Shown piece by piece: positions 918 to 42,898 of a stretch of DNA of 64,000 nt. Positions within the stretch are counted from its first letter, which is position 1. The number at the start of each line of letters is the position of its first letter. The DNA is from Styela clava. Taxonomy: Eukaryota. Below the pieces are notes generated by a model. It saw only the letters and a program-made list of their open reading frames with translations, had not been told where the DNA came from and did no database searches. The stretch is from NCBI RefSeq assembly GCF_964204865.1, contig NC_135264.1, positions 12,586,001 through 12,650,000 of the forward strand. The letters run 5' to 3'. Position numbers and translations under genes: made by a program.

Positions 918-1436
918 AGAACCGGGTTCATGCTTATCGGAAAAATGCACTAGTAATAAAACTCTTCAGTGTTTTATACGAAGAAAGAAAAAATGGTGTC
1001 CAAAATATGAATGTAGAACAAAAAGATGCGAAAGAAAACAATGGGAACCAATTGCAAACGGATTGTTCCCATTTGAAGAGGTTACGGTAAAGGTAAGAAA
1101 TTTAATTTTATTGCATCCGAAAGATGGAATGATTAATCTTTCTGATTAAGAACAGAGTAAATCAATCGATATAAATTGTAATCAGACTAACGCATCTTCA
1201 TAAGCGAAAACAATAAAAATACAAGTAAAATACAACCCATAAACTGACAACTATCAAAAATTATACGAACAGGCGTCGTATGAAAAAGGTAGATAATTTT
1301 TGCAATTTCTGGGAATTAAATCTACTCTTGGTTTTATTTTTAACATAATTTATATTTATATTTTTTAAATTTACAGTATCCGTGCGGATGTGAATGCGTG
1401 GAGATTGACTATTCAGATTCAGACAAGAAGTCTTAA
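918..1436 (+). CDS. Array gene 1 (type A), 3' part only. Exon 3 918-1092 and exon 4 1377-1436 of a secreted Cys-rich, putative cystine-knot protein; 5' exons lie upstream of the window
   Basis: ttttag|A acceptor at 916-917. Exon reads EPGSCLSEKCTSNKTLQCFIRRKKKWCPKYECRTKRCERKQWEPIANGLFPFEEVTVK, then AAG|GTAAGA donor. Last exon ttacag|YPCGCECVEIDYSDSDKKS*. Same phase-2/phase-0 introns and PCGCEC motif as the other members. Confidence 0.8.
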
Positions 1437-4400
1437 AATTTCTGAAACATCCGCCAAACTTAATCAGTGATCCGTGAAAGGTTCAGCTACTAAATTTGCT
1501 TTTAAATTTGTACATGACACCAACTATAAGTGTTGCTTTCATTTTAATATTGGTTGCCACTTTCGTATGCGTTTATTCTCTTGAAGACATTTTCATATGA
1601 TTCAGTTTAGACTAATATCAGTGAGATCACATAATAGCTGAATCGCATACCAATTCGACACCCATTATTGAATGTTATTCTATTAATATTTTATCTATCA
1701 ATGTCGCAAAATATGCTATATTTATTTAATGTGTTTATCTTGTATAATAATAGAAATTGCTTAATAAAGAAAGAAAAAAATCATGCCTTCAATTCTTAAA
1801 AATAGAATGCAATATAGGGATTTCAATTTTCGCCTGATGTCAATTTTTACCGCTGATGCATCATAGCTATCAAAACAATTTAAAGAAGAAGAAAATATAA
1901 CACAGGGCCCCAATGACACATATTTTTATAGTCTTCTAGTATTTAGTTGATGCCGGAAAAAAAATATTATTATCAGTTTTGTCACACATCTAAATTGTGT
2001 GATACTTGTTTAAATGTTTATAAAATATTATAAAAACCATAATGTAACACTGGTTTACTCAAGACAATCAGGTTTTGGCTATACAAACTTTAATGGCTAT
2101 GAAAATTCCAAGATCAATTGATTGCAGGCTTCTTTCTATACGGATGTAATTAACATCAATCTAATTCGGTATCATGCTGTATTCAAAATGATGTCACATT
2201 CACATGCCAGAGCGATAAAGATTCGCATAAGGCTGACTTTTGATTCTTTGAATTTCTAGTTAAAACTAGACTGCTTCAGTTTTACTAATCTATTTATTAA
2301 CGTGAAGTAAAAATAATTTCACTACTACAAAATTCAATAGTCGTAGAGAACTCACGGTATATTTAATAGAATCTAATTGCCATTAGTAAATCGAAAACTA
2401 CAGCTTTGCAATCAGTATCAGCTTCTAAATATTTCAGCCAGACTTCAACTTTTAGTAACATTGGGAGTGAAAAGGAATGAGAGCTACAGTAAAAATACAG
2501 GATGGACTTACATCTGAATAAATAATACAAATTAGAAAAAAAAACACAATCGAATGGCGGAGAGTTCAATAAATTATCACATTCCCACAAATGTCAATCA
2601 GGTGGATAGGCCCATAAATAGGCCATGCCGCACAGAAACAGCAAAGACGAATCATATTGCTGAAAATTGGAATGACATTCCGCAATCGACCCTTCCCATA
2701 TATATAAAGGGAATAAAGTCAACGAGAAAAAAACAGCAACGGGATTAAATAGAAACAAACGGGAAGTATATATATCTATGAATTCACATAATTCAATAAA
2801 ATCTTCAATCGAGTCTCAAGTACGTTTCCTTTGTTAATGCATATTCTTTCTGAAGTATTCATTTACTTAAAGCATGCCATTAAATGAAATAACATGAATT
2901 TTTATATATTGTAGATATTTTTTCCAGTTTGCTTTCGTTTTTTTTTATATCTTTTCTTTATGTAAATTGCATTCGTCGTTTTTCTCGATTTATTGCTCTC
3001 TTTTTTGCTTTTATACACTCAAGGTTCATCCTTTATGATTTACAACGATAAATAAAAAAATTACAGTTGAGTAATATTTTATACACGGGGCCAAAACAAC
3101 CTAATAACAACTCTATTTTGCATCAAAAATGCAGATTGCCAATATTCATATATATGTTGGGTAGTTCGTGCCTCAATTTCGTGCGTGATTAGACAATAGG
3201 TCTTCAATTTCAGTTCCGAGAAGGTTCAAAACTTCAAATCGATGTATATAAAACGATATTTAGTAATGCAAAATGTTATATCCTTATTACAAGTAATGAA
3301 CACAGACTCATTACAAAACAGCACACGATTTATTTGGACGCCGTTAACTTAGTTTAGAATGGAAGACCACAAAACAGGAGAAAAAAACAAGTACACTGGA
3401 CAACATTGTGACGTTTCAATACAGCACACGAGCAGATAAAGTTAACAAGCTCAGCAAAGTGTAAGTTCAAACATAATATCTAACACAGTACAATGGTTTT
3501 CAGAGATAATTTCTTATGAAACGATTGCAGTTCAGATTCAATAGTATCAAGTATCCGAATAGTACCATAACTTTAGGCAAATTTATATATTTTCTCAAAC
3601 GGTTATTGTTGTTGTCTTCAGTAGGAATGAATTTCATTCCAATGATGCATTATTATTTATGCCCTGCGGCCAGGGGTTTTACATATCGCATTAGATTTTT
3701 AGAGCAATATACGATCGGCAACAGACTTTTAGCGACATCTTGTGCATTAACGCGCATTTCTATTAACAGCCATATTGTATTATAATTCAATTCAATGCGA
3801 CGTCGCAATCGTACTTTCAAACTCTTCGAAGTGAAACGTCGAAGTAGAAATTGCAGACCTTTGATCATGATAAAAATAAGTCTACACTTGAAAAGCATTT
3901 AAATTACTAAGCGCTTTCAACGTTCATATAATATATATTAATTTAAAAGTTTCAAGTTGGATTTATATGTATAGTATAAAATATTATTTTGAAACTCTTA
4001 TATATACCATAGTTTTTAGTCCCACTTCCACGAAACTGCATTTGGGCAGACATTTCATGGTAGTGGTTAAACATAAAACCTCGAAGAGTATGGCGCCGGC
4101 ACCACGGTGATTTCGAACCAGCTTCTTCCCAGCCCTGACGGTAGTGGGAATTGATTGTACATTTCTGAAACTCTTCAGACATGATTTTTACTGATTCAGT
4201 TTTTATATTAAATCAAGTTACAAACGCAAAGAAGAATTCGAACATATTTAAAATGATAATTAAGCTTTTCTGTTTATTTTTTTGCGATAAACTTGGCATT
4301 TTCTGTCACGGGATATTTTCGAATTTTGATGTTCTACAAAATCGAACAACACGATTTGTGTCTTCCCATTCCACGCCCATTTAAACTGCACTAACTTTCT

Positions 4401-4880
4401 ATAGCTTAAGGCAAACTTAAGCAGTCCTTGACGTAAGTTGTTCTATACATGTCACTCAAACCAAATTGAAAAAACTCAAGGTATTGATGCGGTTCGTAAA
4501 AATGTATTATCACAACATAGTTTTAGGCTAAAGATACCAGTATATTTCAACGCTAGAATCGTATTTCAGAATTTGGGCTTGACATTTACTACAGCGTCTT
4601 TTTGCTACATATGTTAGCATTAAATAGAATCTGTCCATCAGCATAAGGATTCTAATTCATTCAAAAACACTTCATAGTCTGCACGGAAATAAATTAGAAT
4701 TTCCATTTTGGTCGCTTTCTGGAAATTAATCTGCAGATATTGTCAATAAGCTTGTTGCAAAATATCGTTGAGTTTGAAAATTTAATTTTTAAATACTTTT
4801 ATACTTAATCGTGAAAAAGGTATAAATATATATAAGAAGAGAACGCAGGCACCATGTATCTTTCCAGGTACGCCCAAATC

Positions 4881-6330
4881 ATGCGACTCTACTTCGCCAT
4901 TTTGATTTTCGGACTGCTGAGCGTTGCTCGTGCTGTGCCACCGGATGTAGCGCCACCGGGTGAAGACGCGACTCCTCCATATTATTGCACAGCCAAGTAT
5001 GGGTAGGTAATTTTATTAAATCTGAATGGTGATTAAACATATGCATTTGAAAAAGAGTAGAATATGTTTTTTGTTAGGTCTGTTTTATAATTGTGGCAAA
5101 AATTATTACGACTAAAATTTCGTTAAAACAAAGAAAAGCAAGCATTCATCACCACCATAAAACTTGCAAAACATGCGCAACAATTTTATTCAGTAATGTG
5201 GTGGCAAATGAGCAGGCGCATTAACTTGTCATAAACGGAATAAATAGACAAAACTAGCAATACAGATAACTGAAAGCATCTCAGCTTGTGAAAGAGTAAC
5301 CAAGCGTAGCACTTAATTTTTTTTTTTTTTCAGGATCAATTTTGAAACTTGTTATGCCATTGAAGTAACTCGTCCATGCCCCCTTAGAACTTGCACAACT
5401 ATAATAAAGAAGGGCAATTTATTGGCAACTGGAGAAATAGTCAAGTTGGAGAAATCGATAATAAGAAAAACACAACAATGCAGGTCGGTGACATAATCAC
5501 TATAAATAGAGATAATGTTTAAATTCTATTAAAATAGGCAGTTTTAATATCATGGAAATATCAGTTTATATTAAATGCAATGTATCAGATTTTATATAAT
5601 AATGTTTCGAGGTTTACAACGAAGTGAACAAATAGCCACCGACAAATAGTTTCCTAATACAACAATTACATCGATATGCAAGTCTATCCCATTTCTTTAT
5701 TCCGTACTGAACAATCTGGATCCAACCTGCTAATTTATGCTCAAATACAAGGAGTTCAGATGTTCAATGACTCTTCATTTTCAACTTAGACACAATCGGT
5801 CATGTGGACGAAAAGACTGCAAATGCAGAGATTACTTTGCCACAGAAACCGTGCAAGAAAGTTACCAATCAAAAGACGTAAAACTAAGAAAGTCAGCTAA
5901 AATTGTTATCCGGGTATAAAAATTTTATTTTTTTAGTTTTCAGTATATTCAGTTGTTTGTTTGATCGAGGTACGGTCGCAAGAACTTACCTTGAACTCAG
6001 TAACAGTGAACAAATAATTTCATGAATACAATGGTAAAAAATTCAAATTCCATTTGAAATTTTCTGAAATTTGTTTTGCAATGGTGTGTATTAATACTCA
6101 AACAACAATATCGAGTTTTCAATTATTCAGTGAAATCGTCGGCACTCTGAAAGAGATAATGTTTATCGTTTTGTCCGAATCATTTCTGCGTCTTTATAAG
6201 GACATGTTCACAAATCTCGGCTTTCTTTCAAACCCGGCACTGATTTACAAAAATAACATTTATCATTGAATTGCAGTATCCGGCAAAATGCAAATGTGCG
6301 AGAAAGAGAAACAACTTCGACAAATTTTAA
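4881..6330 (+). CDS. Array gene 2 (type B1), secreted Cys-rich protein, 149 aa. Exons 4881-5002, 5334-5483, 5790-5913, 6277-6330
   Basis: Exons join in frame via GT-AG (122+150+124+54=450 nt): MRLYFAILIFGLLSVARA-VPPDVAPPGEDATPPYYCTAKYG/INFETCYAIEVTRPCPLRTCTTIIKKGNLLATGEIVKLEKSIIRKTQQCR/HNRSCGRKDCKCRDYFATETVQESYQSKDVKLRKSAKIVIR/YPAKCKCARKRNNFDKF*. Hydrophobic signal peptide; TATA-like tract about 4821. Confidence 0.85.
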
Positions 6331-7839: not shown

Positions 7840-8215
7840 CTGAAACGGATCGTTTCCATTTGAAGAGGTTACAGTTAAGGTAAGAAATGTAATTTGATTG
7901 CATTCAAAATGTGAAATGATTAATATTTCTGATTAAGACCAGAGTAAATCAATTTAATATAAATTGTAATCAGATTCACACATCTTCATAATAGAATACA
8001 ATAAAAATACAAGCATAATATCCCTCTGTGAGCCATAAAATGAAAGCTATAAAAAATTACACGAACCGGAGTCAAATGAAAAAAGTTTACAATTTACACT
8101 GACTGTCGTTTTTATTTTTTGACATAATTTATATTTATACTTTCTAAATTTACAGTATCCATGCGGATGTGAATGCGTCAAGATTGACTATTCAGATTCA
8201 GACAAGAAGTCTTGA
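7840..8215 (+). pseudogene. Pseudogene copy of array gene 1 (type A); most of exon 3 deleted, exon 4 intact
   Basis: 7532-7830 matches 1-335, then jumps to the equivalent of about 1055 (AAACGGATCGTTTCCATTTGAAGAGGTTACAGTTAAG|GTAAG). The roughly 0.7 kb that holds the exon-3 acceptor is missing. Exon 4 at 8156-8215 reads YPCGCECVKIDYSDSDKKS*. Confidence 0.75.
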
Positions 8216-10909: not shown

Positions 10910-12320
10910 ATGCGACTCTACTTCGCCATTTTGATTTTCGGCCTGCTGAGCGTTGCTCGTGCTCCGCCACCGGATGATGACGCACCTTCTACATATTATT
11001 GCACAGCCACGTATTGGTAGGTGATTTTATTAAATTTGAACCGTGATTAACAATTGCATTTGAAAACAGGTAGAATATGTTTTTTGTTAGGTCTGTTTTA
11101 TAATTGTGCCAGAAAATATTATCGTTGAAATATCGTTGCAACAAATAAAATCAAAAATAAAAGCTTAAGCATTCAGCACCACCATAAAACGTGCACTGCA
11201 AAACATGCGCAACAATTTTATTCACTAAAGTGGTGACAAATTCCAAAAAAAATGAGCAAGCTCATTAACTTGTCATAAACTGAATAAATAAGACAAAACT
11301 AGCAATACAGATAACTGAAAGCAACTCAGTTTGCCAAAGAGTAACTAAACGTAACACTTTATTTTTTTCTTCTCAGGAGCAATTACGTTTCTTGTGCAAC
11401 CAATGAAGTAACTCGTCCATGTCCCATTAGACCTTGCACAATTATAATAACGGAGGGCAAGTTACTTGCAACTGGAGAAACAGTCAAGCTGGAGAAATCG
11501 ATAACAAAAAAAACACAACAATGCATGTCGGTGAAATAATCACTACAAATAGAGATATTGTTTAAATTCTATTAAAATAAGCAGTTTTAGTATGCATGGC
11601 CATATTAGTTTATATCAAATGCAATGTATCAGATTTTATATATCAATGTTCTAAAGTTTAAATAACGAAAGCTACCGACAAATAGTTTTTAATACAACAA
11701 CTACATCGATATGCAAGTCTGTCCCATTCTTCTTCTTTCCGTACTGAACAATTTGGATCCAACCCGCTACTTTATGCTCAAATACACAAAGTTCGGATGT
11801 TCAATGACTCTTCATTTTCAACTTAGACACAATCGGCCATGTGGAGTAAGAAACTGCAAATGTAGAGATTACTTTGCCAAAAAAACCGTGAAAGTAAGTT
11901 ACTCAAAGGACGGAAGACTAGAAAGAAAGCCAGCTAAAATTGTTATTCGGGTATGACAATGTTATTGTGTTAGTGTACAGTATATTTAGTTGCTTGTTTG
12001 ATCAAGACAAGATCACAAAAAATTACTTTCAACTGGCAAGAATCCAGAAACAGTGAAATAAAAACTTTATAAATATCAAAGATTCCATATAACATCTCCT
12101 GAAATATGTTTTACAATGCTGTGTATTGATATTCATAAAACTATACCGAGTTTTCCATTATTCAGTGAAATTGTCGGCACTCTGAAAGAGATAATGTTTA
12201 TGGTTTTATCTGAATCATTTAACATATATAACATATATCATTGAATTGCAGTATCCGGCAAAATGCAAATGTGCGAGAAAGAGGAGCTTTCTTAGAGGAA
12301 TCAAAGTGTCAAGTGGATAA
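10910..12320 (+). CDS. Array gene 3 (type B2), recent paralog of gene 2, 149 aa. Exons 10910-11016, 11377-11526, 11827-11950, 12252-12320
   Basis: 107+150+124+69=450 nt in frame: MRLYFAILIFGLLSVARA-PPPDDDAPSTYYCTATYW/SNYVSCATNEVTRPCPIRPCTIIITEGKLLATGETVKLEKSITKKTQQCI/HNRPCGVRNCKCRDYFAKKTVKVSYSKDGRLERKPAKIVIR/YPAKCKCARKRSFLRGIKVSSG*. Confidence 0.85.
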
Positions 12321-13586: not shown

Positions 13587-13696
13587 ATGAAGATTTTACT
13601 CGCAGCAGTTCTTTGTGAATTATTAGTCTTATCGTTTGCAAAAAGGCGTTACAATAAAGCACCACCACCTTTACCTGAATGCACAGCAAAGTCAAG
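13587..13696 (+). pseudogene. Orphan exon 1 of another probable family member (signal peptide plus first Cys); downstream exons not found
   Basis: MKILLAAVLCELLVLSFA-KRRYNKAPPPLPECTAKS then AG|GTATTT phase-2 donor. Matches the exon-1 design of gene 2 (..PPYYCTAKYG, phase 2). Confidence 0.55.
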
Positions 13697-14814
13697 GTAT
13701 TTATTTATTGTCTGCGTTCCAGAATAGATAAATATAATATAGCTGATTAATGATGATAAAAAAGAAAAGATTTCATATGTTATGACAACGTGTTTGCATA
13801 TTTGCATATTTTCAGAAGTCTTACTCGTTGGAGTCAATGTGTTGTTTACGACTATACCATTCTAATTTTTCTCCACTATAATTGCTTCCTTAGTACTAGC
13901 GATCAGGAGATTAGCAATTCTCGAATATCAAATAAGAGTCTCTGTTTTGTTCTTTTAATATTTTTTTTGAAGAGAATTACTCTCAGCAAGGTCACACACA
14001 AATTGTGAAACTGATCTCTAACCGAAGTTACCAAAGTGCCGAGATTTAAAAGGGTTATTAAAAATTGAAGCGTTGAATTGCTCGTTACCACACCAACTGA
14101 CATGAGACTTAGGGCAATTTATGCGAATACGATCCGAAAAATAGCTATGGAATATTGAATTCCACTTAACTGTAGGTATTGTAAAAAGCTTTAAATTAAA
14201 TTTATTTTGTCTGGTAGGTATACTGACAGTAAGTTCTCATAACTTACAGTCAACCAACGGATAAAAATATTTCTGAGCTACAAGTTCTGAGAGCGAACAG
14301 GAAAAGATTGTAGTCTTCAATAAATATTTAATTTATACAAATTTAGTGAATATTTGAGATATTTACGAAAATTTTAACGATATTTAAAACGGGGACGGTA
14401 TTAATGTTGTTTGCAATTATTGAACGCTTCCATTGACGACGAGACTCGCTTGATAGTACAAAACTATGAATGGCAAGAACTAATAACTTTTACAAGCGTA
14501 CATTATATTTTCTGCTTTTGATTTTTTAGTTATAAAACTCCGCCATTTTGCTGGAGCCCAACCCACACATGCTTACATCGTAAGTGTAGATTTACCATCA
14601 AGGAAATGCGATTATCTACCGACCCGCCTAAAGACGTCCCACTTTCGAGAAAATATACAGTAGACGTCAAAGAATGCAGGTAACATTAATGCGACATCTT
14701 GTGCTTAGTGAATTAGTTTATAACGTGGTTGAAGAATAGGTTGTAGAAAAAAAATTGTTTTATAATATTTGAATTAGTGCATTGAAAACTTGGAACAACT
14801 TTCCACAGAAAATT

Positions 14815-15138
14815 GGGACCTCCAGAAGTATGTGCACCAAGATGGCGCATATCCTGAACATAGATGTGTACCAGGTCAGGGTTCAGGTTGTGCGCCGATA
14901 CTTTAGGAGCGCCGAAAATTGCTAGCAAATTTACGTAAATAGACAAAAGTGATTATTTTAAACAATAGGCGCTTCTGGAGTATGCGTACCAAGATGACAG
15001 ACACGGAACGTAGCATGTGTACCTGGTTAACGTCAGGCCATAATTTTAGGTACAAATACTACGGGAGTCCCTCACCTGGTACACGTACTACGTTCCGGTG
15101 TCCGCCATCTGGGTGGGTACGCATATTTCAGGAGTACC
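14815..15138. mobile_element. Two adjacent MITE family 1 copies/fragments
   Basis: ACCAAGATG(G)C...GTGTACC motifs at about 14837 and 14987; TACTACGTTCCGGTGTCCGCCATCT at about 15086. Confidence 0.65.
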
Positions 15139-15233
15139 AGATTAGGTATACAAATTTTGTAAAAATTCAAGACAAGTCAGTCATGAGGTGGTTCATGACT
15201 GTTCTATACATATGATTTTTACTTGGCACTAAC

Positions 15234-15401
15234 CAGTGGTGGGATTCAAATTTTTTGTCAGCCGGTTTCATCACACAAATGTCATATTTTCAGGCGGTTC
15301 TGTTACAAAAAGTCATGTAATGTTAACCGGTTCGCTGATCTTATAAAATTCCGTGAGACGGTTCTATAGAACCGGTTCGAACTGGCTAAATCCCACTACT
15401 G
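15234..15401. mobile_element. hAT-type MITE family 2 (terminal inverted repeat, TIR, CAGTGGTGGGATT)
   Basis: CAGTGGTGGGATT ... AATCCCACTACTG; reverse-orientation homolog of 20155-20321; TSD degenerate (GCACTAAC/GTACGAAC). Confidence 0.8.
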
Positions 15402-15842
15402 GTACGAACTGACAACTTTTACAAATATTTAGCAATAATTCAATTTAAAAAATATTGACAGAGGAGAACCTGATGGACGACCATGCAGCGAAGGTGGCAC
15501 GTGTTCATGTAGACACGAATTCAAGTGGATTCTGATAGAAACATACGTTATCATACACAACAAATCGCCATTCGGAGAACTCACTCATGCCAAGTCCATG
15601 AAAAGAATCGGTTATGCACGCGTGAGTGATATAAAAGTTGAAGTATTCAGTAAAAAGGGCAAAATGATTGTAAATTTATAATTGTACTTGAATATTATCA
15701 TAATACTATGGATGCCGATTTTAGGTAAAATGAAACAGTTACATATAGATAGATTATACATCATTGATAAATGAATTGATTTATGATTTATGAAATGATT
15801 TATGAAATGAGTTATAAATGTCGGGAATTACCTGTCCTATAA

Positions 15843-16140
15843 TAACAAGAGAGCTATGCTGAAATATATGGATATGTAGCGCCACCTAGTGGCAGATGTC
15901 GATGACGTCATGGCACATAAAAAAACGAATCCCATACAGCTCACCGGAATATTTGAAAAAAACAAAAGAAGTACCCTTTTGGTGAAAAATTTAATCTTTG
16001 AGCCCCGAAAATTTCAAAGCGATTGCTCCAGTAATCAAAGAGAAATGCTGATTTTTTCTGTGACAAAGAACAAGAACAAAAAGGGCGCCAGCATAAAATG
16101 CAAAACGATGGCAATGTCCACTAACGTGTCCAATAATTAG
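15843..16140 (-). repeat. Dispersed ~300-bp repeat family 3 (also at about 59555-59880 and 62630-62925, opposite orientation)
   Basis: Shared motifs ATGCT-AAATATATG, GATGACGTCA and CAATTG-TTC(C)AG in reversed order relative to the two mib1-intron copies. Confidence 0.55.
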
Positions 16141-19100
16141 ATCCCACTTTGGTATTCGATATCAGCGCCGTAAAACTACTTTGATACGTCATATAAATTG
16201 CTCAATGTGATTTCAATCACATACCAAAATGGCACAACAATTGACATGTGTTCAGTCTCATAAAGACATTCTCATAGAATTCAGTTTTTAACCCTAACGT
16301 TGGGTTGGGGTTTAGTTTATTCTAAAATCAGATCGAGACTGCATACAAAAGTTGTATCAACTTGTACACAAAATTTTACAGGTTCCAGATGGATGCAGAT
16401 GTGGAATGAGAAAAGCTGGTCCATATCCATAGTGCCCAGAGATCAAAACGAAAAACTTTTTTGTACAGTAGAGTAGAGCAAGAATGTATCATGTGTCTTG
16501 TATTTATATTCAATTAAAAATACATATAGAGTCTTTTAAATCTGTAATTTTAAAGTATTACTGAAATAGTAATAACATGAATAATATATAGATAGAATAA
16601 TTGGACTTCGAACACACAACTAAATCAATGGGGATCAAAAATCAACACAAGGATATATTGTCGCCACATCACTGGATTACGATTCTACTATGTACGAATT
16701 TTGCATATATGAATTATGGTTGAATCTGTGTATATAGTGGATATAGTTCATACCTCCTTTATCATTTTCGCAGTTGAATTAAATTTAATTCCAAAATAAA
16801 ATACTTCTGAATATATTTTATGTAGTACAAATATAATAGTAAATTATTCAGTATGTTGTATAAAAAAAAGCTTGTTTTTGTTTTGTCGATCGAGTGACAA
16901 AATATTTAGTACTACCACAAAAAAATAAACAATCGAACAAAAAAAAAAATAAACAATCGAAAAGAAGCAAATCTGTGGTTATTTGCGGCGTTTTTCTGCT
17001 GCGAAAGTATTTAGTTTTCTACAAGATTGTTAAATCACTTCCAGCCATACGTCAATGATGAACGAAATAAGCCTTTGCAAATTTGTTAATCACTTCAGTG
17101 CATGATTCGAAAATATTTATCCAAGTATTCCCAAGATCAAGGTTAAATATCTATGATCATAAATGGGAAAAAGTTAGAATCTGTAACTTCTGGGTTTAAA
17201 TATAGACAACCGCTTAGGCTGGGATGTCCATGTTAAATATATTTATAGCAAACTTTCTCGTGTCGTGAGTATGTCGTATAAACTTCGACATTGTATATTT
17301 TCAAATTTTTCAATCATATATCTAATATCATGAATATGCAAGTGTAGCATGGAGATCAACATCTCAATCAATTTTGCATAGAATTAGAGTGCTTCAGAAC
17401 AGGGCCGTTAAAATACTTCATCGTTTTTTCTGTTCGTTTAAACCTCATAACATAATATATAACAAAACTACCATTCTAAAGCTTGCAGATATTTAAAATT
17501 AGAGGTCTGTAAGCTCATGCACATATACAACAATCTGTGTCTATCTATTGCGTTTAATAGTGATTTTACCAGATTGAGTAATAACACATGCAACACACAA
17601 CACAAGATCAGCCTCTACAGTCAACACACTCTTCCCATTCAGCTCATTTCAAAACTCAAAATTATTTTAAATTCAAGAAAGTAAAAATGAAGAATGACAT
17701 AGCAAGTGGGTTAAAACGAAGTCAGCCTCATCAGCTCTCCAGAGCAAAGTTATAAAAAAAAAAAATTTATTGCCATAATATATACTGGATGGCCCTAATC
17801 ATTTTTGTTAAATATCATACTCATTTGTATTAAAAATGGCACAAGCAACATTTGAGACAAAGCTGTATAGTGCCACTATACCGGTACAGATTTACCAAGT
17901 CAAGCAGTTAGGAAGTCGTACTACCGGTATATTTCTATGATTATTAAATTCTGAGTTTCCAATAAATGTGTTTCAGACAATTTCGCCTCACCTGATGTCA
18001 GAATGTCGAGATTGATCATTCAACGTTTTCTTATAATTCATATAAATTTGTTCTTCCTACTTTCTGCAGCATTTTTTCCACTTGACACTTCAGTCATATC
18101 TGCTCAGTTGTCAATGAATTTGATGTCACTTTATATCTGCAACATCGTTTCAATGCATGAATATATATTTACATGGAGTACCTCCGTACCGGTAACCTGT
18201 GTTCAGTTGGATATAGCCTACCGATACAAACTACGGTACCGTATACAGTACAGCAGTACCGGTATCGTTAAGGCGTTTCCCGCTTACAGGTACGGTACCG
18301 GTAATGATCAAATGAAACAACCTATTGTATCATTTTTATTTATCGTACCTGCCTTTCTTATCACTTCATATTGCTGTATTGCGGTATTTACTTTGTAACA
18401 AAGCTTCACGTTGTCCCGCTTCGAGTCATTCAGTTGAATAGGTGCAGCCGTGTGTCTTCACCGAAATATGTGCTGCCATTAATAATTAGTTCAGAAGATC
18501 CCGTGTTCCGCAAAGCCACACAAATGGATTCAAAGTTCACGACGCAAATAGGAACTTCATTACAAATGGTAAAACACACGATTAAAGCAGATAATATCAG
18601 CGCGACGGAATACGACGCTTACCCCAGGACAGCCAAAGCAAGGAGGACGCTGCAATCAACAGCAAGTCGTCACGTATGCAGCGGTGGTTGGAGTCGAGCA
18701 ACAGAATCTGACTATCGGGTGCAATTAGGGCTCAAACTTCACCCGCCAATGCATTGACTACACAAAAAATATAAATACGATATGAAACAATGAAAAATAG
18801 GACGACTTCAGTCTCGCCACATATGGTATTCCGCGTCTACGCGTCGGTCTTGTGGGTCCTTAATATAATTTCTAGTACGGTAAGTGATGATACTTGAATA
18901 ATTCGCACGACACTTATTGTATATATCGCTAGTTTTAATAATCTTAAAATTTCATTTTTCAAAAACTAGATATCATAATATTGTATGTCGCTGGTCGGTA
19001 ACCAGCTATTGTTGTCCGCGATTTTCATCTCCTAGTAGTGGAAAAAATAAACTTGACTTGACAAGGCGGTTATACAAGTATTTTTTTTACTAACTATTGA

Positions 19101-19321
19101 AAATAGGATACATCAATAGGACATATATGACCATAATAAAACCCTTTGGTATTTTAGGCCCAATTAATTCGAATAAGTAATATTTCTAGACATGTGTATA
19201 CATCACTGATTTAGGGCATTCTACATGTTTTTATAACTTTTTGTATGTTTGGCATTCATGACAATCATTATTAGAATTTATTATATTTATCTATTTTTTG
19301 ATGCAGTGAATAAAAAATTAC

Positions 19322-26871: not shown

Positions 26872-28415
26872 ATGAAGTTGATTACTGTTGTCGTGTTGTT
26901 TGGTTTTGTAATCCAAGCATTTGCCCAAGAACCAGCTAAAGCTCAGCCCGAGCCATCGTCTGATGATGAAGAGAATCTATCGATTAAGGGTCTCGTCACG
27001 AGCGATATCGAAGGAGGCGGGGCTCGTCACATAGTTCGCTTTAAACCACCTAAATGCGCTGCTCCTACGTGAGTATTTATTGCATCTAATTTTCATATTT
27101 CCTTTTCATCAGCATGCTGCTTGAACCAACTACACCTGATAAATATACAATGAATTTGAAAATTAGAAAAACCTTTTAAAAGGTGATTTTAGGAAAGGTT
27201 GGATCAAAAAGAATAAGATATAAAAAGTGGCATAACACTTAATATATATTTTTGTTTGAAGATTTTACAAACCACCTAGACAGTGCAAAGGACATTGCTC
27301 GGCGACATATTGCAATCTTATTATCAGAGAAGGATACACCGAATGCAATTACTTGCCTCTTACGCTTGCTAGGGGTATCAAAGTTATAGGAGTCCAATGC
27401 AAGTAAGCAATTTTATTTATTTCCAAGATTTTTCCCATCCATATGAAAAACTATTTTTCACATAAGTGTAATTTTTCCCTATTTGCACTGAGAGTTATCA
27501 ATTACCCAATTTTTTGTGAACCGAAAATCCATTTTATTTGAATGACTGACTCCTCATTTATATTCGTCAGTTTCAAACACAATTTACCACAGTCCAACTA
27601 GTTATTATAAAACCCTGTTACGCTAGCTTCATTAAAGAACTAATAATATATTATAAGATACTCAAATTTCATGATAAATTTGCGAAAAGTTATAAGATCC
27701 CATACGAAAGAATAATTGCATTCCACTATCTGATTGAACCCCCGATTAAATTTTCACTTAATTTTCCAACTCTGATTTTATCTCAATTTAAAACACATCA
27801 CTTTTATTCAGATCTGGATCGAAGTGCGGAGATTACAACCAATGCAAATGTGTGACATTGTTCAAATCTATCAAACTCACACGTCTAATCGTCATGTACA
27901 GCAAAAAGGGATACCGTTCATACTACTTTGCCAAAGTATACATCAGGGTAAGTTTTTTGAAAAGTTTGCACAATTTAATTTCATCCACCACTCTCCAAAC
28001 TGGACCAAAATAATTGTAGAGTATATGAGAGCAATCAAATGCTGAGGTCTTTGGAGATACATAATGTTGTTTTTTTGACAGAAATGTCAGTAGATGGTTG
28101 GAATCTATGAGATCGCCTTAATTTTTAAAGCAATATAGGCAGATTTGATTTGACTTAGGACTAAGATATTTGTCATCTTTTGGAAAAATGACACGGACTA
28201 CTTATTTTTTCTTCGGGACATCAAAAAAAGATTAAAAATAGCTAAATTTAGTGAATTGTATATACTGATTTAACTCTATTTTAGTAATCATGAGCTTGTA
28301 ATCTTTGTCATGCAAGTGTTTTATATTTAAATTATATTTTATAATGAACGCCAGATCATAACTCCAAAATATCATTTTACAGGTGCCATACACTTGCCAG
28401 TGCAGCAAGTATTAG
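26872..28415 (+). CDS. Array gene 5, secreted Cys-rich protein, 168 aa. Exons 26872-27068, 27262-27402, 27812-27947, 28383-28415
   Basis: 197+141+136+33=507 nt: MKLITVVVLFGFVIQAFA-QEPAK...GGGARHIVRFKPPKCAAPT/FYKPPRQCKGHCSATYCNLIIREGYTECNYLPLTLARGIKVIGVQCK/SGSKCGDYNQCKCVTLFKSIKLTRLIVMYSKKGYRSYYFAKVYIR/VPYTCQCSKY*. TATAAAA about 26776. Confidence 0.88.
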
Positions 28416-30910: not shown

Positions 30911-32692
30911 ATGCTGCCTATTATGAAAAGTTGCATCGTTATTTTCGTGCTTGTGTTAACAGCAGCAGCATCATGGGCTATGCCAGATATACTTCAGCCT
31001 GTGGTCGATGAAATAGGAGAGGCGCTTCCGGCTGAACTTGACCCAAATTTACCACGAGGAGGTTCAGCTGTACAGTCGGTAGCTCGTGGAGCGAGTTCTA
31101 ATGTCGGTGGGTCGCACACGTCAACCAGGACATGCCCAGCTACTTGGTGAGAGATTTTCAGTGCTCGGCAAAGGAGAAAATTATTACCTAATAAACAAAC
31201 AATGTATATGAGTTTTAACGGAATTATTAAAATGAATCAATTTTATCAAAATTTTAATTTATCTATTAATAGAATATCAGTGAATTTAGGTGTCACCACA
31301 ATTCTTATCAAAAACTTAGTTATATTTGTGTTTATTTTTATTTGTGCAATATCACAATTGTTCATAATGAATTATATATAATTTCAACTTACTTTCAATA
31401 TAGGGGAGATTCGAAACATCCTACCTGTTCGACGACTGTTTGTACGATTAAGTCATGCACTGCGGTAATATACAGCGGATATTACTGCGGATTGGAATTT
31501 CAATTAGAAAGACCGCTTTCGGTTCGCGGAGAATCATGCGGGTAAGTCTTTAATCTAAGTCATGGTAATGCCGCAAAGAACACAAATCTGGCATCGTATA
31601 TAAGAGATTATCCAGTAAAGAAACGTGTTGATGTGCCATAGCCGTCACGAATATTTTCAACTCCAAAATATTCTTTGTCCACTACGTTATAGGCTGTTCA
31701 CATCGCGATCAAGGGGATGACTGTGAACTGAAGTTACACAAAAAGCAAAAGCCCTATTGTAAAAGCGTAATGTTTGGGAATTTTGACTATTTAGTTTTAA
31801 CATGAACTTCACAGGCGCATGGTTTACAAACTTAACGCCGAAAATTTGTGTCTGCGTTTACATTGTGGAGCTTTTTTTGGCGGCTTAAAAAAAGTGAGTT
31901 TCATTTTTCCCAATAATATATTTTAGTGTTGAAAACTTATCGTGTGGAAAGAAATGGTGGCGACCATGTTTATGCAAGTCTAAAACCTGTTGGTTCGAGT
32001 CTAAACGAAACATCAAACACTCCGGCAAGTTATATTCAGTCGATGTGTGGATAAAGGTATGAATGCTCATATTTTTAGTATTTCCGCTTAGAATATTATG
32101 TTCTTCATGTTTGAATTTAAATAGCTTTTGCAAATCATGTTTCATGATATATAAAATTTACATAGTCCATGTCAATAGGCAGTATGCATCAGACCCGAAA
32201 TAGTTGATATAAGCGGTACTGGTTGCTGTGTGCATATCCGCATTGCTTTGTACAGCTGACAATGAATCACAGCCTTTGTGACTAACGTCATTAAATTATT
32301 TTAAGATAGGTTTTAAATTTTAAAATAAATATGCAAAAAGGAGATCACCCATAACTTACTCTGAATTGCAAAATCAATTCCTAACTTCTTCGGAACAAAA
32401 ATAATAACTTAAAAATAAAAAAAATAAAAAGTTCTTATGGCTGTGGCTGTGGTAATCAAACAAATATAGCATACTCAAGTTTTTTTCACAATAATCGACA
32501 AGACAAATATCTGTGGTCGTTGTATGCCCTTTGCAGCAGAAGCCCAGGATTGTATAAACAATTTGTGTAGATCTTTATAAAACTTTCGATTGTTTTTTGC
32601 AGCGTCCATGTGGATGTGAATGCCGTGGAAAGGAGAAAAACAAGCCGAATATTCGTTTACCTTTCGGTGGTTTCAATTTCCGTATTCCGTGA
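30911..32692 (+). CDS. Array gene 6, secreted Cys-rich protein, 197 aa (start may be 30923). Exons 30911-31146, 31404-31541, 31927-32056, 32603-32692
   Basis: 236+138+130+90=594 nt: signal MKSCIVIFVLVLTAAASWA ...RTCPATW/GDSKHPTCSTTVCTIKSCTAVIYSGYYCGLEFQLERPLSVRGESCG/VENLSCGKKWWRPCLCKSKTCWFESKRNIKHSGKLYSVDVWIK/RPCGCECRGKEKNKPNIRLPFGGFNFRIP*. Confidence 0.88.
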
Positions 32693-37033: not shown

Positions 37034-38326
37034 ATGAAAGGTTTTCTTGTGGTTCTTGCACTTGGCTTTTTTGTAGCAACATGGGCAGAGGAACCAAAAA
37101 TACTCGAGGATGTTAAGTTTGAATATGTGGTGGAAGAAGAGCCAGAAGGCGATCTCAAAATCAAAAAAATCGTTGATGGATATGGACCTGATCATGGGGA
37201 GAGACCTCCTGGAACAGGAGCAAAGTCACTCGGTGGTAACTATTACGGGAATAATAGGTATAACCGTGGTGGATATTATTACGCCCAATGTCCTGCTTAC
37301 GGGTTAGTATTTTTTCAAATTTATTCAATAAGTTACAAATTTCAGATATTTTTTCAATTTTTGTCACATACCTGCCGTCTTGAACTTCTGAGCTTGTGTT
37401 TGATAATTTATGTGTATTTTTCCAGCTACAAACCCGTGCACCCCATCTGTTCAGCAGCTAATGAATGCTACAAAAGTCATTGTAAAGTCTCAATAAGTAA
37501 AGGATATTACTGCGGGTTGCAGTTTTTCTTGCACAAACCCCTTGTGGTCGCTGGAACCTATTGCAAGTAAGTAATATGCACTTATTTTTTTAAGATAAAT
37601 TCGGTACATTAAGGTACGGAAGTTACATTCGAGAAAAGCTTTCTTTAATACAAATAATGTGTTATAACCGAAATTTAAATTCAGATCGTATGATATATAT
37701 ATATATTTCCATCCAATTTTCAAGTGAAAACACAGTGATTCCGTTCAGGTCCAAAACTCAACAATGCGGAAAGAACCACTGGCGTAAATGTTACTGCACA
37801 ACCAAATTCTGTTGGTTCAAGTTGAAGAAAGTTATCAAGCACTACAGTAAATTCTACATCGTCTATGTATGGATGAGGGTATGTTATACTTACATGAAAT
37901 TTGAGTTTTTCAATTAATATGAAATCTCAAAACCGTCGCCACCAAGGTTTCACTGATAAAATATTGACTTGAAGATCATATAATTATTCTTTACATTAAA
38001 AGTCGCTATGCTGAATCATTTTTCGTGTGGTTTTGTATACAAGTCATGCATGCTGTTGTAAATAAAGGCTAAATTTTCAACAATGATTAATCTAACTATT
38101 TTTCTTACAGCGTGCTTGTGGATGCGAATGCCGTGGAAAGATGGTACCTAAGCCGTATTACCCTCCTGTTCATTATTCCAAACCGAGTCATCCCAAACCA
38201 GTTTATCCTAAGCCACATTACCCGACTAAACCAGTTTATCACAGTAGAACATCCTATACTGATGATTCGTATGCGGGGTACCCAACTGGTGGTGATACCT
38301 ACCCAAATACCTACGGAGATTGGTAG
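37034..38326 (+). CDS. Array gene 7, secreted Cys-rich protein with Gly/Tyr/Asn linker and Pro/Tyr/His/Lys tail, 251 aa. Exons 37034-37302, 37426-37566, 37749-37878, 38111-38326
   Basis: 269+141+130+216=756 nt. Signal MKGFLVVLALGFFVATWA; core ..AQCPAYG/YKPVHPICSAANECYKSHCKVSISKGYYCGLQFFLHKPLVVAGTYCK/SKTQQCGKNHWRKCYCTTKFCWFKLKKVIKHYSKFYIVYVWMR/RACGCECRGKMVPKPYYPPVHYSKPSHPKPVYPKPHYPTKPVYH...GDW*. TATAAA at 36961. Confidence 0.9.
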
Positions 38327-41003: not shown

Positions 41004-42898
41004 ATGAAAGGTTTTATCCTTGCGCTTGTAATAAGCGTCTTTGCGGTATCCTGGGCCCAAGATGGGGCTGACGGACCGAATCCACTCCAGGTTGTAAATG
41101 TTGCAAATGTGAAAGAAGAAAAACCCGGGGGCGACCTAATCGTAACTAGTGAAGAAAGTAATGTAGGTGACAATACTCTGTCTTCAGCTTCTTATAACTC
41201 CGGCCAGTCTGGGGCAACTGGAGCAAAATCTCTGGCAACCGGGGCTAGACATTTTTGGCCCCCTCCAGTATACCCACATCCTAATCCTTATGACACATGT
41301 CCAGTATACAGGTAAGAGTTGTTTGAAAAATTTGTTATTTTATCGAACTATATTCAACGTAAAACACGACTGCTAATTTTTATAATTTAGGTATGAGCCG
41401 AAGGACCCCGTCTGTAGAGCAGGTCATTCTTGCAGCAAGCGTCGATGTAAAATTAAAGTAAAGAAAGGATATTACTGCGGATTGGAATTCTACTTGTACA
41501 ACCCATTTTGGGTCGCCGGAAGCTATTGCAAGTAAGTCATGGATTGATAGAAAATATATTTTTAAATAATATAGAAACCATTTCACTAGCTAACGTGTAC
41601 TCAACAATAGTTTTTCGACGGGTATATATAGATAGATTGAGCTTACCCGAACTACCCAGTTTCTTTGTATTTTCAATTAGATATATATATATAGTACTTT
41701 GCAGTATATAATAAATGTATCTGCTTACAATTCCTATTTTTTTCGTTCAATTCCCAAACAATGTATAGAAGGTTTTTAAGTTATGTATTGTCTGAATCTT
41801 CATGAGGTGTTAAAAATCATTCACCGCTTATTCTCTTTTTTAAATAAATGTTTCTACATACGTGATGTGTTGAAATAGTTTTGCGCTTTTGCGCGTGATT
41901 CTGTAAAATCATAAAATTACGCGCTTCGGGCTATTTTTCATCAGCGCTTTTAACGTGAAAGTAAACAAACGTGCGCTGACGAACATGAACCACACGGAAT
42001 TAATTGGAAAGTAGATTATTTATATCTGCTGTTGATTTTCAGTCCAAAAAAGTATGACATTGTCATTGTCAATAATAAACCGCCCTTCCGAGGCGCTCAA
42101 CCAATAACATATTGATGAAAAACCCGACAGCCTACGATTTATTTTATTTTATTAAGATGTTGACACAGCATTTGACTTAACTTTTTATTGCAGGTCTCAA
42201 TCTAAGTGTGGACTCGATTACTGGCGTCTATGTTACTGTAGAACCAAGTTCTGTTGGTTCAAGCTGAAACGTGTTATCAAACACTACAGCAAATATTACT
42301 TCGTTTATGCGTGGATGAGAGTAAGTATTACTTGTTTTATGGATTTTTGGGAATTGATTATCTCTATATAATATAATATCAAAAATATATTCTGGAATAC
42401 CATAATTATATGCTCTGTTACAACAACTCCCATCTTGGGCCTCGTCATACGGATACATGTTATCACCGTTTGTTTCAATGTGCCGCTTATCTTATTGAAC
42501 GTGGCATGGATACGGACAAATGTCCTACAAATATTTTTTTATTCAATGGTCATCAAAGTATATCAATGAGATTGACGCGATTCATAAGTCATATTTAACA
42601 GGTATGAGTGACGTAATTGTGCGGGTTTCAGTAAAACTTCCTTAAGGCCTTTCAATTTTACTAAATATTAGGAAATATTTAGAACTTCGTATTTCTTAAC
42701 TACAGTATGCTTTTTCTATTGCAGCACCCATGCGGATGTGAATGCCGTGGCAAGAAGAAGCAAAAGCCATACATTCCTCATCCAACTATATACCATCCGC
42801 CCACACCTCACACAATTTATCCGGATTTACCATACTATCCGGATCAACCTTATTATCCGGATACAGACCACCCCTATCCACATGGTCCCATTTGGTAA
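41004..42898 (+). CDS. Array gene 8, secreted Cys-rich protein with Pro/Tyr/His/Asp tail, 249 aa. Exons 41004-41311, 41391-41531, 42194-42320, 42725-42898
   Basis: 308+141+127+174=750 nt. Signal MKGFILALVISVFAVSWA; core ..DTCPVYR/YEPKDPVCRAGHSCSKRRCKIKVKKGYYCGLEFYLYNPFWVAGSYCK/SQSKCGLDYWRLCYCRTKFCWFKLKRVIKHYSKYYFVYAWMR/HPCGCECRGKKKQKPYIPHP...YPDLPYYPDQPYYPDTDHPYPHGPIW*. TATAAAA at 40931. Confidence 0.9.

What the first reader, a model, noticed from the sequence alone, without database searches (positions are those of the whole stretch)
918..42898. Hidden tandem array of a diversified secreted cystine-knot-like protein family (7 complete genes plus partial and relic copies)
Seen: none of these genes appears whole in the ORF track, but splicing gives seven complete 4-exon genes with identical intron phases (2,2,0). 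Each has a signal peptide, one Cys at the end of exon 1, a Cys cluster ending in Q/Y/S-C at the end of exon 2, CG..CxC in exon 3 followed by alternating beta-strand-like sequence, and (P/A)-x-x-C-x-C at the start of exon 4. Apart from the framework, distant members share little identity. Knowledge: this spacing, best seen in gene 4 (CRFIVYP...KQC....C.......CTCQTQY...KFTVPGGCKC), recalls the Spaetzle/neurotrophin/coagulogen cystine knot (C....VYP...C...C...CKQHY...FKIPSCCKC) and Trunk/PTTH/Noggin-type knots. Inference: a lineage-specific expanded family of secreted ligands or extracellular structural/clotting proteins that I cannot assign to a named gene.
Basis: partly seen in the sequence, partly recalled or inferred. 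Interest (0 to 1): 0.92.

Follow-up and report, generated by a model that had tools for sequence, protein, structure and literature searches.

The report
Sea-squirt array of NGF/Spätzle-fold secreted proteins
The window holds eight complete genes and one partial gene of a sea-squirt (Styela clava) family of at least 30 small secreted, cysteine-rich proteins; no sequence method can name them, but they are predicted to fold like nerve growth factor, Spätzle and horseshoe-crab coagulogen, a protein class thought to be lost in tunicates.

Summary
Between 918 and 42898 there are eight complete four-exon genes, all GT-AG with intron phases 2,2,0. There are also the last two exons of a ninth gene and one relic last exon. 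Every exon model tiles a RefSeq "uncharacterized protein" of Styela clava exactly, so the genes are annotated but unnamed.

All encode a signal peptide and a basic (pI about 10-11) domain of roughly 100-120 residues with eight invariant cysteines. Paralogues are only 19-27% identical.

Pfam, PDB sequence searches and a 1.84-billion-protein phmmer scan find nothing outside S. clava.

AlphaFold2 models of two distant members have confident cores (pLDDT 81-92). They match neurotrophins first (Foldseek prob 1.0; VIA Z 5.3 and 5.9), then coagulogen, Spätzle and PTTH. Language-model neighbours are Spaetzle/NGF clusters. The genome's own 32+ canonical IL-17 genes are unrelated at profile level.

The array is larger than reported: about 24 loci over 230 kb of chromosome C19, plus copies on C18 and C16. 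The youngest pair has dN/dS of about 1.

Knot topology, expression and function remain untested. Other notes of this scan cover the same array.

The parts
918..1436 (+). g1 (LOC120334632, P0010), last two exons only: exon 3 at 918-1092, exon 4 at 1377-1436. Exons 1-2 lie upstream of the window.
   Evidence: Splice sites. Exon peptides match P0010 residues 110-167 and 168-186 at 100%. The protein has 14 Cys after the signal peptide.
4881..6330 (+). g2 (LOC120333629, P0007, 149 aa). Exons 4881-5002, 5334-5483, 5790-5913 and 6277-6330. An in-frame ATG also lies upstream at 4854.
   Evidence: TATA-like box 52-60 nt upstream of the ATG.
8156..8215 (+). Relic last exon, a copy of g1 exon 4. It was left by the 6-kb tandem duplication, which did not copy the g1 exon-3 region.
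   Evidence: Self-BLAST: 1056-1776 matches 7843-8550, and 283-1055 has no counterpart. Open frame with the P-C-G-C-E-C motif. Exon-4 HMM E 1.7e-4.
10910..12320 (+). g3 (LOC120334593, P0004, 149 aa). Exons 10910-11016, 11377-11526, 11827-11950 and 12252-12320.
   Evidence: Young paralogue of g2 (about 80% DNA identity; dN/dS about 1).
13587..16432 (+). gX (LOC120334592, P0008). Exons 13587-13696, 14530-14679, 15462-15642 and 16382-16432. The exon-3 donor is uncertain: 15621 and 15669 are also in phase.
   Evidence: RefSeq isoform X1 runs through the exon-3 donor to the stop at 15681 and lacks the final C-x-C. Exon 4 has a canonical acceptor and the V-P-D-G-C-R-C start.
20752..23347 (-). g4 (LOC120334089, P0005, 170 aa). 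Exons 23347-23229, 22790-22614, 21969-21822 and 20820-20752. It is the only minus-strand member in the window.
   Evidence: 100% over all four exons. Isoform X2 (P0009) skips exon 2. AlphaFold2 model m86bc70e8fedc.
26872..28415 (+). g5 (LOC120334297, P0006, 168 aa). Exons 26872-27068, 27262-27402, 27812-27947 and 28383-28415.
   Evidence: It has 11 Cys and an acidic N-terminal region of about 42 residues.
30911..32692 (+). g6 (LOC120334083, P0003, 196 aa). Exons 30911-31146, 31404-31541, 31927-32056 and 32603-32692.
   Evidence: It has 13 Cys. AlphaFold2 model m195682e82c26.
37034..38326 (+). g7 (LOC120334530, P0001, 251 aa). Exons 37034-37302, 37426-37566, 37749-37878 and 38111-38326. Exon 4 carries a 66-residue tail rich in Pro, Tyr, Lys and Thr.
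   Evidence: 100%. Tail composition: P 19%, Y 16%, K 9%.
41004..42898 (+). g8 (P0002, 249 aa). Exons 41004-41311, 41391-41531, 42194-42320 and 42725-42898. Exon 4 carries a 52-residue tail rich in Pro, Tyr and His.
   Evidence: 100%. Tail composition: P 26%, Y 15%, H 9%.

Best explanation
The stretch is the downstream third of a large tandem array in Styela clava. The array has about 24 loci over some 230 kb of chromosome C19, with further copies on C18 and C16.

Each gene has four exons and encodes a signal peptide, then in some members an acidic pro-region, then a strongly basic domain of about 100-120 residues. That domain is predicted to be a neurotrophin/Spaetzle/coagulogen-type cystine knot: two pairs of long twisted beta-hairpins pinned at one end by disulfides.

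Six of the eight invariant cysteines fall where the six knot cysteines of NGF fall. The other two would add a second strand-1 to strand-3 bridge.

Shown here: the gene models, the secretion signal, the cysteine framework, the predicted fold, the family size, and fast protein divergence with the framework kept.

Inferred: the proteins act outside the cell as cytokine-like ligands. Members with an odd cysteine count (g5-g8) probably form disulfide-linked dimers. Repeated duplication with near-neutral amino-acid turnover diversifies their exposed strand surfaces for immune, wound or developmental signalling. The Pro/Tyr-rich tails of g7 and g8 would then tether the ligand to matrix or tunic.
For: Gene models: (exact tiling of RefSeq proteins).

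Signal peptides: plus N-terminal helices.

Framework: eight invariant Cys at 19-27% identity. Exon-2 alignment of 15 genes has 4 invariant Cys.

Fold: core pLDDT 81-92 in two models. In Foldseek against the PDB, almost all of the first 28-30 ranked hits (of those printed, all but coagulogen) are neurotrophins, with prob 1.00, E 2e-3 to 5e-3 and TM 0.50-0.63 on the target. In VIA against 48,161 chains, NGF scores Z 5.3 (88 residues, 3.9 A) and Z 5.9 (87 residues, 3.6 A). proNGF scores 4.9/5.8, coagulogen 4.8/4.5, Spaetzle 3.9/4.3, PTTH 4.3/3.7. The first 13 and the first 27 rows respectively are all cystine-knot factors.

ESM-Atlas: Spaetzle/NGF clusters at 0.86-0.92. Sub-threshold Pfam Spaetzle hit in g4. 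Basic domains with pI 10.1-10.8, like neurotrophins and coagulogen (my own knowledge).

Diversification: g2/g3 dN/dS is 0.95-1.08, with dN about equal to intron divergence and all Cys kept.

Family size.
Against: No sequence method reaches significance for any known family. The assignment therefore rests on predicted structures built from a shallow 9-sequence alignment, and on Z scores (5-6) that the tool itself calls middling.

Disulfide connectivity could not be read from the models. No RNA evidence could be obtained.

Candidate receptors are not evident. Only 3 TIR matches were found in the genome (a lower bound). Tunicates are reported to lack Trk and p75NTR (PMC2772990).

dN/dS of about 1 in the youngest pair also fits relaxed constraint or incipient pseudogenisation. 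g2-g4 and gX have no pro-domain, unlike NGF and Spaetzle. Amino-acid differences are not concentrated in hairpin loops.
Confidence: 0.55

Rival explanations
1. Coagulogen-like structural proteins. They would be secreted precursors that, after limited proteolysis, polymerise or are cross-linked to plug wounds, harden tunic or glue the animal down, rather than signalling. The proteolysis might occur at the G-A-R/K motif that ends the pro-region of g5-g8. The Pro/Tyr/Lys/His tails of g7 and g8 would be substrates for phenoloxidase (DOPA) cross-linking.
For: Coagulogen is among the best structural matches (Z 4.8 and 4.5; Foldseek prob 0.99-1.00). The tails have 15-16% Tyr and 19-26% Pro and resemble Tyr/Pro/Lys adhesive repeats (my own knowledge, not tested). 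The domains are basic. The pro-regions are acidic and end in a small-small-basic motif (scan note s1-820119).
Against: Only two of the nine window genes carry such tails. Four have no pro-region to cleave. NGF scores above coagulogen in both models. Structural proteins are usually abundant and conserved, not diverging at dN/dS of about 1. No expression or DOPA data are available.
Confidence: 0.2
2. Cationic defence effectors. The stable, disulfide-rich, very basic domain would act directly on microbes or on competitors, and the array would diversify in an arms race.
For: pI is 10.1-10.8 for every domain. The proteins are secreted. The family is a tandem expansion of at least 30 loci with rapid amino-acid change. 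It is restricted to one lineage in all database searches.
Against: A domain of about 100-120 residues with a growth-factor fold is much larger than typical antimicrobial peptides. No resemblance to known antimicrobial families appeared in Pfam or the PDB. No functional data exist.
Confidence: 0.12
3. Highly divergent IL-17 family members, with a complete knot like the invertebrate 'T1A' type. This would be another arm of the large IL-17 expansion in this genome.
For: The proteins end in a G-C-x-C motif after a beta-strand, as IL-17s do. IL-17A/IL-25 appear among the structural matches (Z 3.0-4.2), and IL17-bearing clusters among the Atlas neighbours. IL-17 genes also form tandem arrays here.
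Against: The Pfam IL17 model finds 32 loci over its cut-off in this genome and none in this array, nor in any of the nine proteins. Comparing the family's profile with that of 12 of the genome's own IL-17 domains gives probability 1.3%, over 6 columns only. In this genome the IL-17 domain lies in one exon, whereas here it is split over exons 2-4. NGF outranks IL-17 in all four fold searches. PMC11087794 reports complete-knot IL-17s as lost in tunicates.
Confidence: 0.04
4. This is not a true cystine knot but a lineage-born Cys-rich beta-hairpin protein. It would resemble growth factors only because long disulfide-stapled hairpins look alike to structure predictors and aligners.
For: Z scores of 5-6 and Foldseek E values of 2e-3 to 5e-3 are below the tools' confidence marks. 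The alignment used for folding has only 9 sequences. There is no significant sequence link to any family. Ring threading is unverified.
Against: The hit lists are almost purely cystine-knot factors and are led by one subfamily in two models of proteins only 24% identical. The independent language-model search points to the same families. The C-terminal C-x-C, the spacing of the three preceding cysteines and the cysteine opening strand 1 line up with NGF residues 15, 58, 68, 80, 108 and 110 when the reported alignment ranges are followed (NGF numbering from my own knowledge).
Confidence: 0.09

Closest known systems
Neurotrophins (NGF, BDNF, NT-3, NT-4; Pfam PF00243)
   Same: Best structural match for both models (Z 5.3-5.9 over 87-88 of 99 residues; Foldseek prob 1.0). 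Both are secreted, basic domains of about 100-120 residues, with a cysteine at the start of strand 1, three cysteines before the last hairpin and a terminal C-x-C. Some members have an N-terminal pro-region.
   Different: There is no detectable sequence similarity (Pfam and PDB searches blank). This family has eight to fourteen cysteines instead of six. The domain is split over three coding exons with phases 2,2,0. Four members have no pro-domain, and no furin-type site was seen. The family has tens of fast-evolving tandem copies instead of one to four conserved genes. Trk and p75NTR are reported absent from tunicates.
Spaetzle / Drosophila neurotrophins (Pfam PF16077)
   Same: Top language-model neighbours (0.92 for g4). 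This is the only Pfam cystine-knot trace (g4, E 1.3, over the C-terminal half of the model). Structural Z is 3.9-4.3. An odd cysteine count in g5-g8 would allow a Spaetzle-like intermolecular disulfide. Both are multi-gene families linked to immunity and development.
   Different: The match is far below Pfam's cut-off (10 versus 27 bits). Whether a clip-protease cleavage site is present was not examined. Only about 3 TIR-domain loci were detected in the genome, against at least 30 ligand-like genes.
Horseshoe-crab coagulogen (PDB 1AOC; Pfam PF02035)
   Same: Structural Z 4.5-4.8, Foldseek prob 0.99-1.00. It also has the NGF-type knot with extra disulfides, is strongly basic, and is a precursor activated by cleavage after Arg in small-residue contexts (my own knowledge).
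   Different: No sequence match. Coagulogen is a single abundant clotting protein of chelicerate haemocytes. Nothing here shows polymerisation. Only the knot half of coagulogen aligns (residues 82-175 for g6).
IL-17 family (Pfam PF06083), abundant in this same genome
   Same: Cystine-knot-like cytokine fold, a terminal G-C-x-C, and tandem gene clusters.
   Different: Tested and not related at profile level (hhalign probability 1.3%). The IL17 HMM does not hit the array. Exon structure and cysteine pattern differ.

Membership tests
Neurotrophin/Spaetzle/coagulogen cystine-knot superfamily | Significant match to a family sequence profile (PF00243 NGF, PF16077 Spaetzle) | tested here: not met
   hmmscan of all nine proteins at E<=10 gave only Spaetzle in g4, at E 1.3 and 10.2 bits against a cut-off of 27. 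Single exons gave nothing. The PDB sequence and profile searches were blank. The whole genome has no Spaetzle hit, and only two NGF hits at E 0.44 and 6.3, both elsewhere.
Neurotrophin/Spaetzle/coagulogen cystine-knot superfamily | Fold: two pairs of long twisted antiparallel beta-strands joined at one end, superimposable on NGF | tested here: met
   AlphaFold2 cores have pLDDT 81-92 and four or five long strands. NGF is first in all four searches: Foldseek prob 1.0 with TM 0.50-0.63, and VIA Z 5.3 and 5.9. The scores are moderate and the models are predictions.
Neurotrophin/Spaetzle/coagulogen cystine-knot superfamily | Six conserved cysteines in the order and spacing of the knot, ending in C-x-C | tested here: met
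   There are eight invariant Cys columns. Following the alignment ranges reported by VIA (g6 88-179 to NGF 12-115; g4 59-161 to NGF 11-115), g6 Cys 91, 123, 130, 140 (or 138/145), 172 and 174 fall at or near NGF Cys 15, 58, 68, 80, 108 and 110. This mapping is my inference from offsets, not a residue-by-residue alignment.
Neurotrophin/Spaetzle/coagulogen cystine-knot superfamily | Threaded disulfide ring (one disulfide passing through the ring closed by two others) | not testable with these tools
   Model coordinates are not exposed, so S-S distances and threading could not be measured.
Neurotrophin/Spaetzle/coagulogen cystine-knot superfamily | Secreted pre-pro-protein activated by cleavage upstream of the knot | tested here: inconclusive
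   Signal-like N-termini are present in all eight genes that start in the window. Pro-regions of 32-79 residues occur only in g1 and g5-g8, and are absent in g2, g3, gX and g4. Cleavage cannot be tested here.
Neurotrophin/Spaetzle/coagulogen cystine-knot superfamily | Functional dimer and a Trk/p75/Toll-type receptor | not testable with these tools
   No usable result on self-association. Only 3 TIR matches were found in the genome (a lower bound). Trk and p75 were not searched. The literature reports the neurotrophin system as absent from Ciona (PMC2772990, PMC2586362).
IL-17 (PF06083) | Match to the IL17 profile | tested here: not met
   No IL17 hit in any of the nine proteins. The genome-wide IL17 search gives 32 loci over the cut-off, none between C19:12.47 and 12.71 Mb.
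IL-17 (PF06083) | Profile-level relatedness to the same genome's IL-17 domains | tested here: not met
   hhalign of A2 against A5 (12 S. clava IL-17 domains): probability 1.3%, with 6 aligned columns covering only G-C-x-C.
TGF-beta / PDGF / glycoprotein-hormone / DAN knots | C-x-G-x-C plus C-x-C forming an eight-membered ring; structural match | tested here: not met
   The motif here is C-G/S-x(3-6)-C-x-C. These families score below NGF (Z 2.2-4.0).

The most novel reading that the evidence does not exclude
The neurotrophin/Spaetzle lineage was not lost in tunicates. In the Styela lineage it diverged beyond sequence recognition, gained two extra framework cysteines and a 4-exon structure, and expanded to 30 or more tandem genes. 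These now signal through non-Trk receptors (Toll-like, TNFR/p75-like or something new) in immunity, wound repair or metamorphosis. Some members (g7, g8) are fused to DOPA-type adhesive tails that anchor the ligand in the tunic.
Probability: 0.3. Interest if true: 0.8.

Novelty: new variant of a known kind. Interest (0 to 1): 0.62.

Why it matters
Tunicates are the closest living relatives of vertebrates. They are cited as having lost neurotrophins and their receptors (PMC2772990, PMC2586362) and complete-knot IL-17s (PMC11087794).

A family of 30 or more genes with the neurotrophin/Spaetzle/coagulogen fold is invisible to BLAST and Pfam and carries no name in RefSeq. Depending on its ancestry, it would revise that picture or reveal a new lineage-specific cytokine or clotting system.

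It also gives a concrete gene set for two open questions in ascidians: what the ligands for ascidian Toll-like receptors are, and how wound plugging and tunic repair work. It is a clean example of a constant disulfide scaffold carrying fast-changing surfaces.

If the fold assignment is wrong, it is still a large, unnamed, rapidly evolving secreted family in an invasive fouling species.

Tried and rejected
- Exon-by-exon Pfam scan of ten exon peptides: no hits.
- Full-length Pfam scans: only noise, plus Spaetzle at E 1.3.
- PDB sequence search with one protein and with the family profile: blank.
- phmmer of g7 against 1.84 billion representatives: only g8 and g6.
- Profile search of 5.8 billion proteins: only S. 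clava paralogues. This search needs shared 5-mers, so a blank says little about distant kin.
- Homodimer test (complex prediction, two copies of g6 residues 72-186): 'no answer', score 0.22 against a mark of 0.32. This is neither support nor evidence against.
No RNA-seq check of junctions or tissues was made.
- Test for concentration of g2/g3 and g7/g8 differences in hairpin loops: none found (21/71 strand positions versus 3/20 loop positions for g2/g3). I make no claim of loop hypervariability.
- TIR count as a proxy for Toll-like receptors: only 3, a lower bound and not decisive.
- Literature searches for the LOC numbers, and for Styela plus cystine knot, coagulogen or Spaetzle: nothing on this family. 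A tunicate holdfast DOPA-peptide paper (PMC13079984) gave no link.
Full-length sequences came only from database proteins that the tools returned.
All later work used coordinates.

Full report
**What is there.** The window is AT-rich eukaryotic DNA (GC 28-38%). It corresponds to G000:C19:12586001-12650000. Database hits name the organism as Styela clava, which agrees with earlier notes of this scan.

I listed stop-free segments that carry C-x-C motifs. This gave eight complete four-exon genes, here called g2, g3, gX, g4, g5, g6, g7 and g8. Only g4 is on the minus strand. It also gave exons 3-4 of a ninth gene, g1, whose first exons lie just upstream of the window, and an isolated copy of the g1 last exon at 8156-8215. 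Every intron is GT-AG with phases 2,2,0.

A 6-kb tandem duplication (1-7220 versus 7532-13198, 74-87% identity across the aligned blocks) explains g2/g3 and the relic exon.

**Independent confirmation of the models.** Instead I queried the protein databases with stop-free window references. One was the open frame 36860-37570, which happens to span exon 1, intron 1 and exon 2 of g7. Another was the exon-3 frame of g3. The third was an alignment of exon peptides given by reference.

These searches returned nine RefSeq or UniRef entries, all 'uncharacterized protein LOC1203…' of Styela clava. My exon peptides tile these proteins end to end, leaving exactly one residue for each phase-2 split codon and none at the phase-0 junction.

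There are two qualifications:
- RefSeq isoform X1 of gX reads through the exon-3 donor and so lacks the terminal C-x-C, although a canonical exon 4 exists in the genome.
- g4 has an isoform X2 that skips exon 2.

So the genes are 'hidden' only from an ORF track. They are annotated but unnamed.

**Protein anatomy.** All eight genes that start in the window begin with a hydrophobic signal-like segment (best 12-residue Kyte-Doolittle mean 2.6-3.2) followed by a small-x-small site.
- g2, g3, gX and g4 go almost straight into the Cys domain.
- g1 and g5-g8 have 32-79 residues of mostly acidic, low-confidence sequence first.
- The Cys domain is 99-123 residues with a computed pI of 10.1-10.8.
- Eight Cys columns are invariant across the family, while identity to g4 is only 19-27%.
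- g5 has 11 Cys, g6-g8 have 13 and g1 has 14.
- The extra cysteine in exon 3 and the extra one in exon 4 co-occur in g1 and g6-g8. This leaves one unpaired Cys in the first hairpin of g5-g8. That pairing is my inference from co-occurrence.
- g7 and g8 end in tails of 66 and 52 residues with 19-26% Pro and 15-16% Tyr.

**What it is not, by sequence.** Pfam finds nothing in single exons or in full-length proteins, apart from a sub-threshold Spaetzle match in g4 (E 1.3, 10.2 bits, cut-off 27). That match covers the C-terminal half of the model. PDB sequence and profile searches are blank. phmmer of g7 against 1.84 billion cluster representatives finds only g8 and g6.

**Fold.** I ran AlphaFold2 on the nine-protein alignment, with g4 first and then with g6 first. 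Both runs gave confident cores: pLDDT 81-92 over about residues 60-160 of g4 and 90-180 of g6. Each core is made of four or five long beta-strands.
- Foldseek against the PDB returns neurotrophins in almost all of the first 28-30 ranked places for both models (prob 1.00, E 2e-3 to 5e-3, target-normalised TM 0.50-0.63). Coagulogen sits among them, and Spaetzle and IL-17F come lower.
- The Foldseek-independent VIA search of 48,161 chains puts NGF first for g4 (Z 5.3, 88 residues, 3.9 A) and for g6 (Z 5.9, 87 residues, 3.6 A).
- After NGF come proNGF (4.9/5.8), coagulogen (4.8/4.5), Spaetzle (3.9/4.3), PTTH (4.3/3.7) and IL-17A (3.8/4.2), then DAN, Norrin, PDGF and TGF-beta-type knots.
- The first 13 rows for g4 and the first 27 for g6 are all cystine-knot factors.
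- These Z values are middling by the tool's own calibration. I therefore rely on the consistency of the lists rather than on any single score.
- The ESM-Atlas feature search, which uses no structure, gives Spaetzle- and NGF-bearing clusters as nearest neighbours: 0.86 for g7, and 0.92 with 189 shared features for g4.

Following the alignment ranges that VIA reports, the invariant cysteines line up with NGF Cys 15, 58, 68, 80, 108 and 110 (NGF numbering from my own knowledge). That leaves two extra invariant cysteines that could form a second bridge between strand 1 and strand 3. I could not read model coordinates, so ring threading is unverified.

**The IL-17 rival.** The C-terminal G-C-x-C and the tandem organisation also suggested IL-17, so I tested it directly.
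- The Pfam IL17 model finds 32 loci over its cut-off in this genome, clustered on C3, C5, C2 and other chromosomes. Each has the domain in one open exon, and none lies in this array.
- An alignment of 12 of those domains compared with the family profile by hhalign gives probability 1.3%, over six columns only.

IL-17 membership is rejected.

**Extent of the family.** Exon HMMs run on the 70 kb upstream of the window, and an exon-2 profile from 15 genes run on the whole genome, show the following:
- 23 strong exon-2 matches on C19 between 12,474,935 and 12,704,224, plus the more divergent g1.
- Two genes on C18.
- A weaker cluster on C16.

The same exon order and the [IV]-P-x-G-C-x-C last exon are seen wherever I looked. 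The window therefore holds about a third of the main array. The array ends before a Mind bomb-like gene at 59.8-63 kb.

**Evolutionary mode.** For the youngest pair, g2/g3, dN/dS is 0.95 overall and 1.08 for exons 2-3. dN (0.16) is about equal to intron divergence (JC 0.12-0.21), and all cysteines are retained. Older pairs give 0.27-0.45, with synonymous sites saturated. This fits either diversifying selection on a fixed scaffold or relaxed constraint, and I cannot separate the two. Differences are not enriched in predicted loops.

**Mechanism.** I commit to secreted neurotrophin/Spaetzle-superfamily-like cystine-knot proteins acting extracellularly.
- Ligand or cytokine function is the most likely role (about 0.45-0.5), because all close structural classes except coagulogen are receptor ligands.
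- A coagulogen-like structural, clotting or adhesive role comes second (about 0.2). It is favoured by the g7/g8 tails and the G-A-R/K motif.
- A direct cationic effector role comes third (about 0.12).

Receptor candidates are unclear. Only 3 TIR matches were detected (a lower bound), and the neurotrophin receptor system is reported absent in Ciona (PMC2772990; PMC2586362 states that NTs are thought lost in tunicates).

**Limits.**
- The self-association job gave no verdict. It is listed only among things tried.
- No eukaryotic genomes other than this one can be searched here. The taxonomic range rests on protein databases alone.

**Relation to other notes of this scan.** Notes s1-819902, s1-819903, s1-820119, s1-816093 and s1-815909 describe parts of the same array, so the scan has seen this family before on adjacent or overlapping DNA.

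Noticed in passing
G000 C3:14.84-14.87 Mb, C3:2.19-2.23 Mb, C5:14.72-15.08 Mb, C2:18.35-18.38 Mb and others (loci L012-L023): The Styela clava genome carries at least 32 canonical IL-17 domains over Pfam's cut-off, mostly in tandem clusters. Each is encoded in one open exon with the C-L-C-K-G-C … V-G-C-T-C pattern. This is a large IL-17 expansion, separate from the family studied here.
   Followed up: partly
window 59807-62818 (+): Exons of a Mind bomb-like E3 ubiquitin ligase gene flank the array. The Pfam matches are MIB_HERC2 (E 9e-8, 32.3 bits, just under the 33.5 cut-off), ZZ zinc finger (E 3e-11) and Mind bomb SH3 repeat (E 7e-8). The gene could serve as a synteny anchor in other tunicates.
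   Followed up: partly
window 6772-7005, 20941-21170, 43311-43558: A repeat of about 230 bp matches itself and its other copies in both orientations (70-84% identity). It is palindromic and looks like a MITE-type transposon scattered between the genes.
   Followed up: no
window 20752-23347 (-), protein P0009: RefSeq isoform X2 of g4 skips exon 2. This removes four framework cysteines and the first hairpin, so the product could not form the predicted knot. It may be a splicing by-product or a regulated inactive form.
   Followed up: no
window 15462-16432 (+), protein P0008: RefSeq isoform X1 of gX reads through the exon-3 donor to a stop at 15681. It also lacks two residues (E-V) that the window encodes. 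An intact exon 4 with a canonical acceptor lies 700 bp downstream. gX may be decaying, or the model may be incomplete.
   Followed up: partly
L001-L005 (C19:12,521,000-12,558,300): Upstream array members occur in a repeated block. The exon-2 copies at C19:12524605 and 12538916 are identical, as are those at 12528091 and 12544419. This indicates a recent segmental duplication of about 14-16 kb carrying several genes.
   Followed up: no
window 44944-46148 (-): Open frames here look to me like remnants of a hAT-type transposase C-terminal region. Pfam gave no hit at E<=0.01, so this is unconfirmed.
   Followed up: partly
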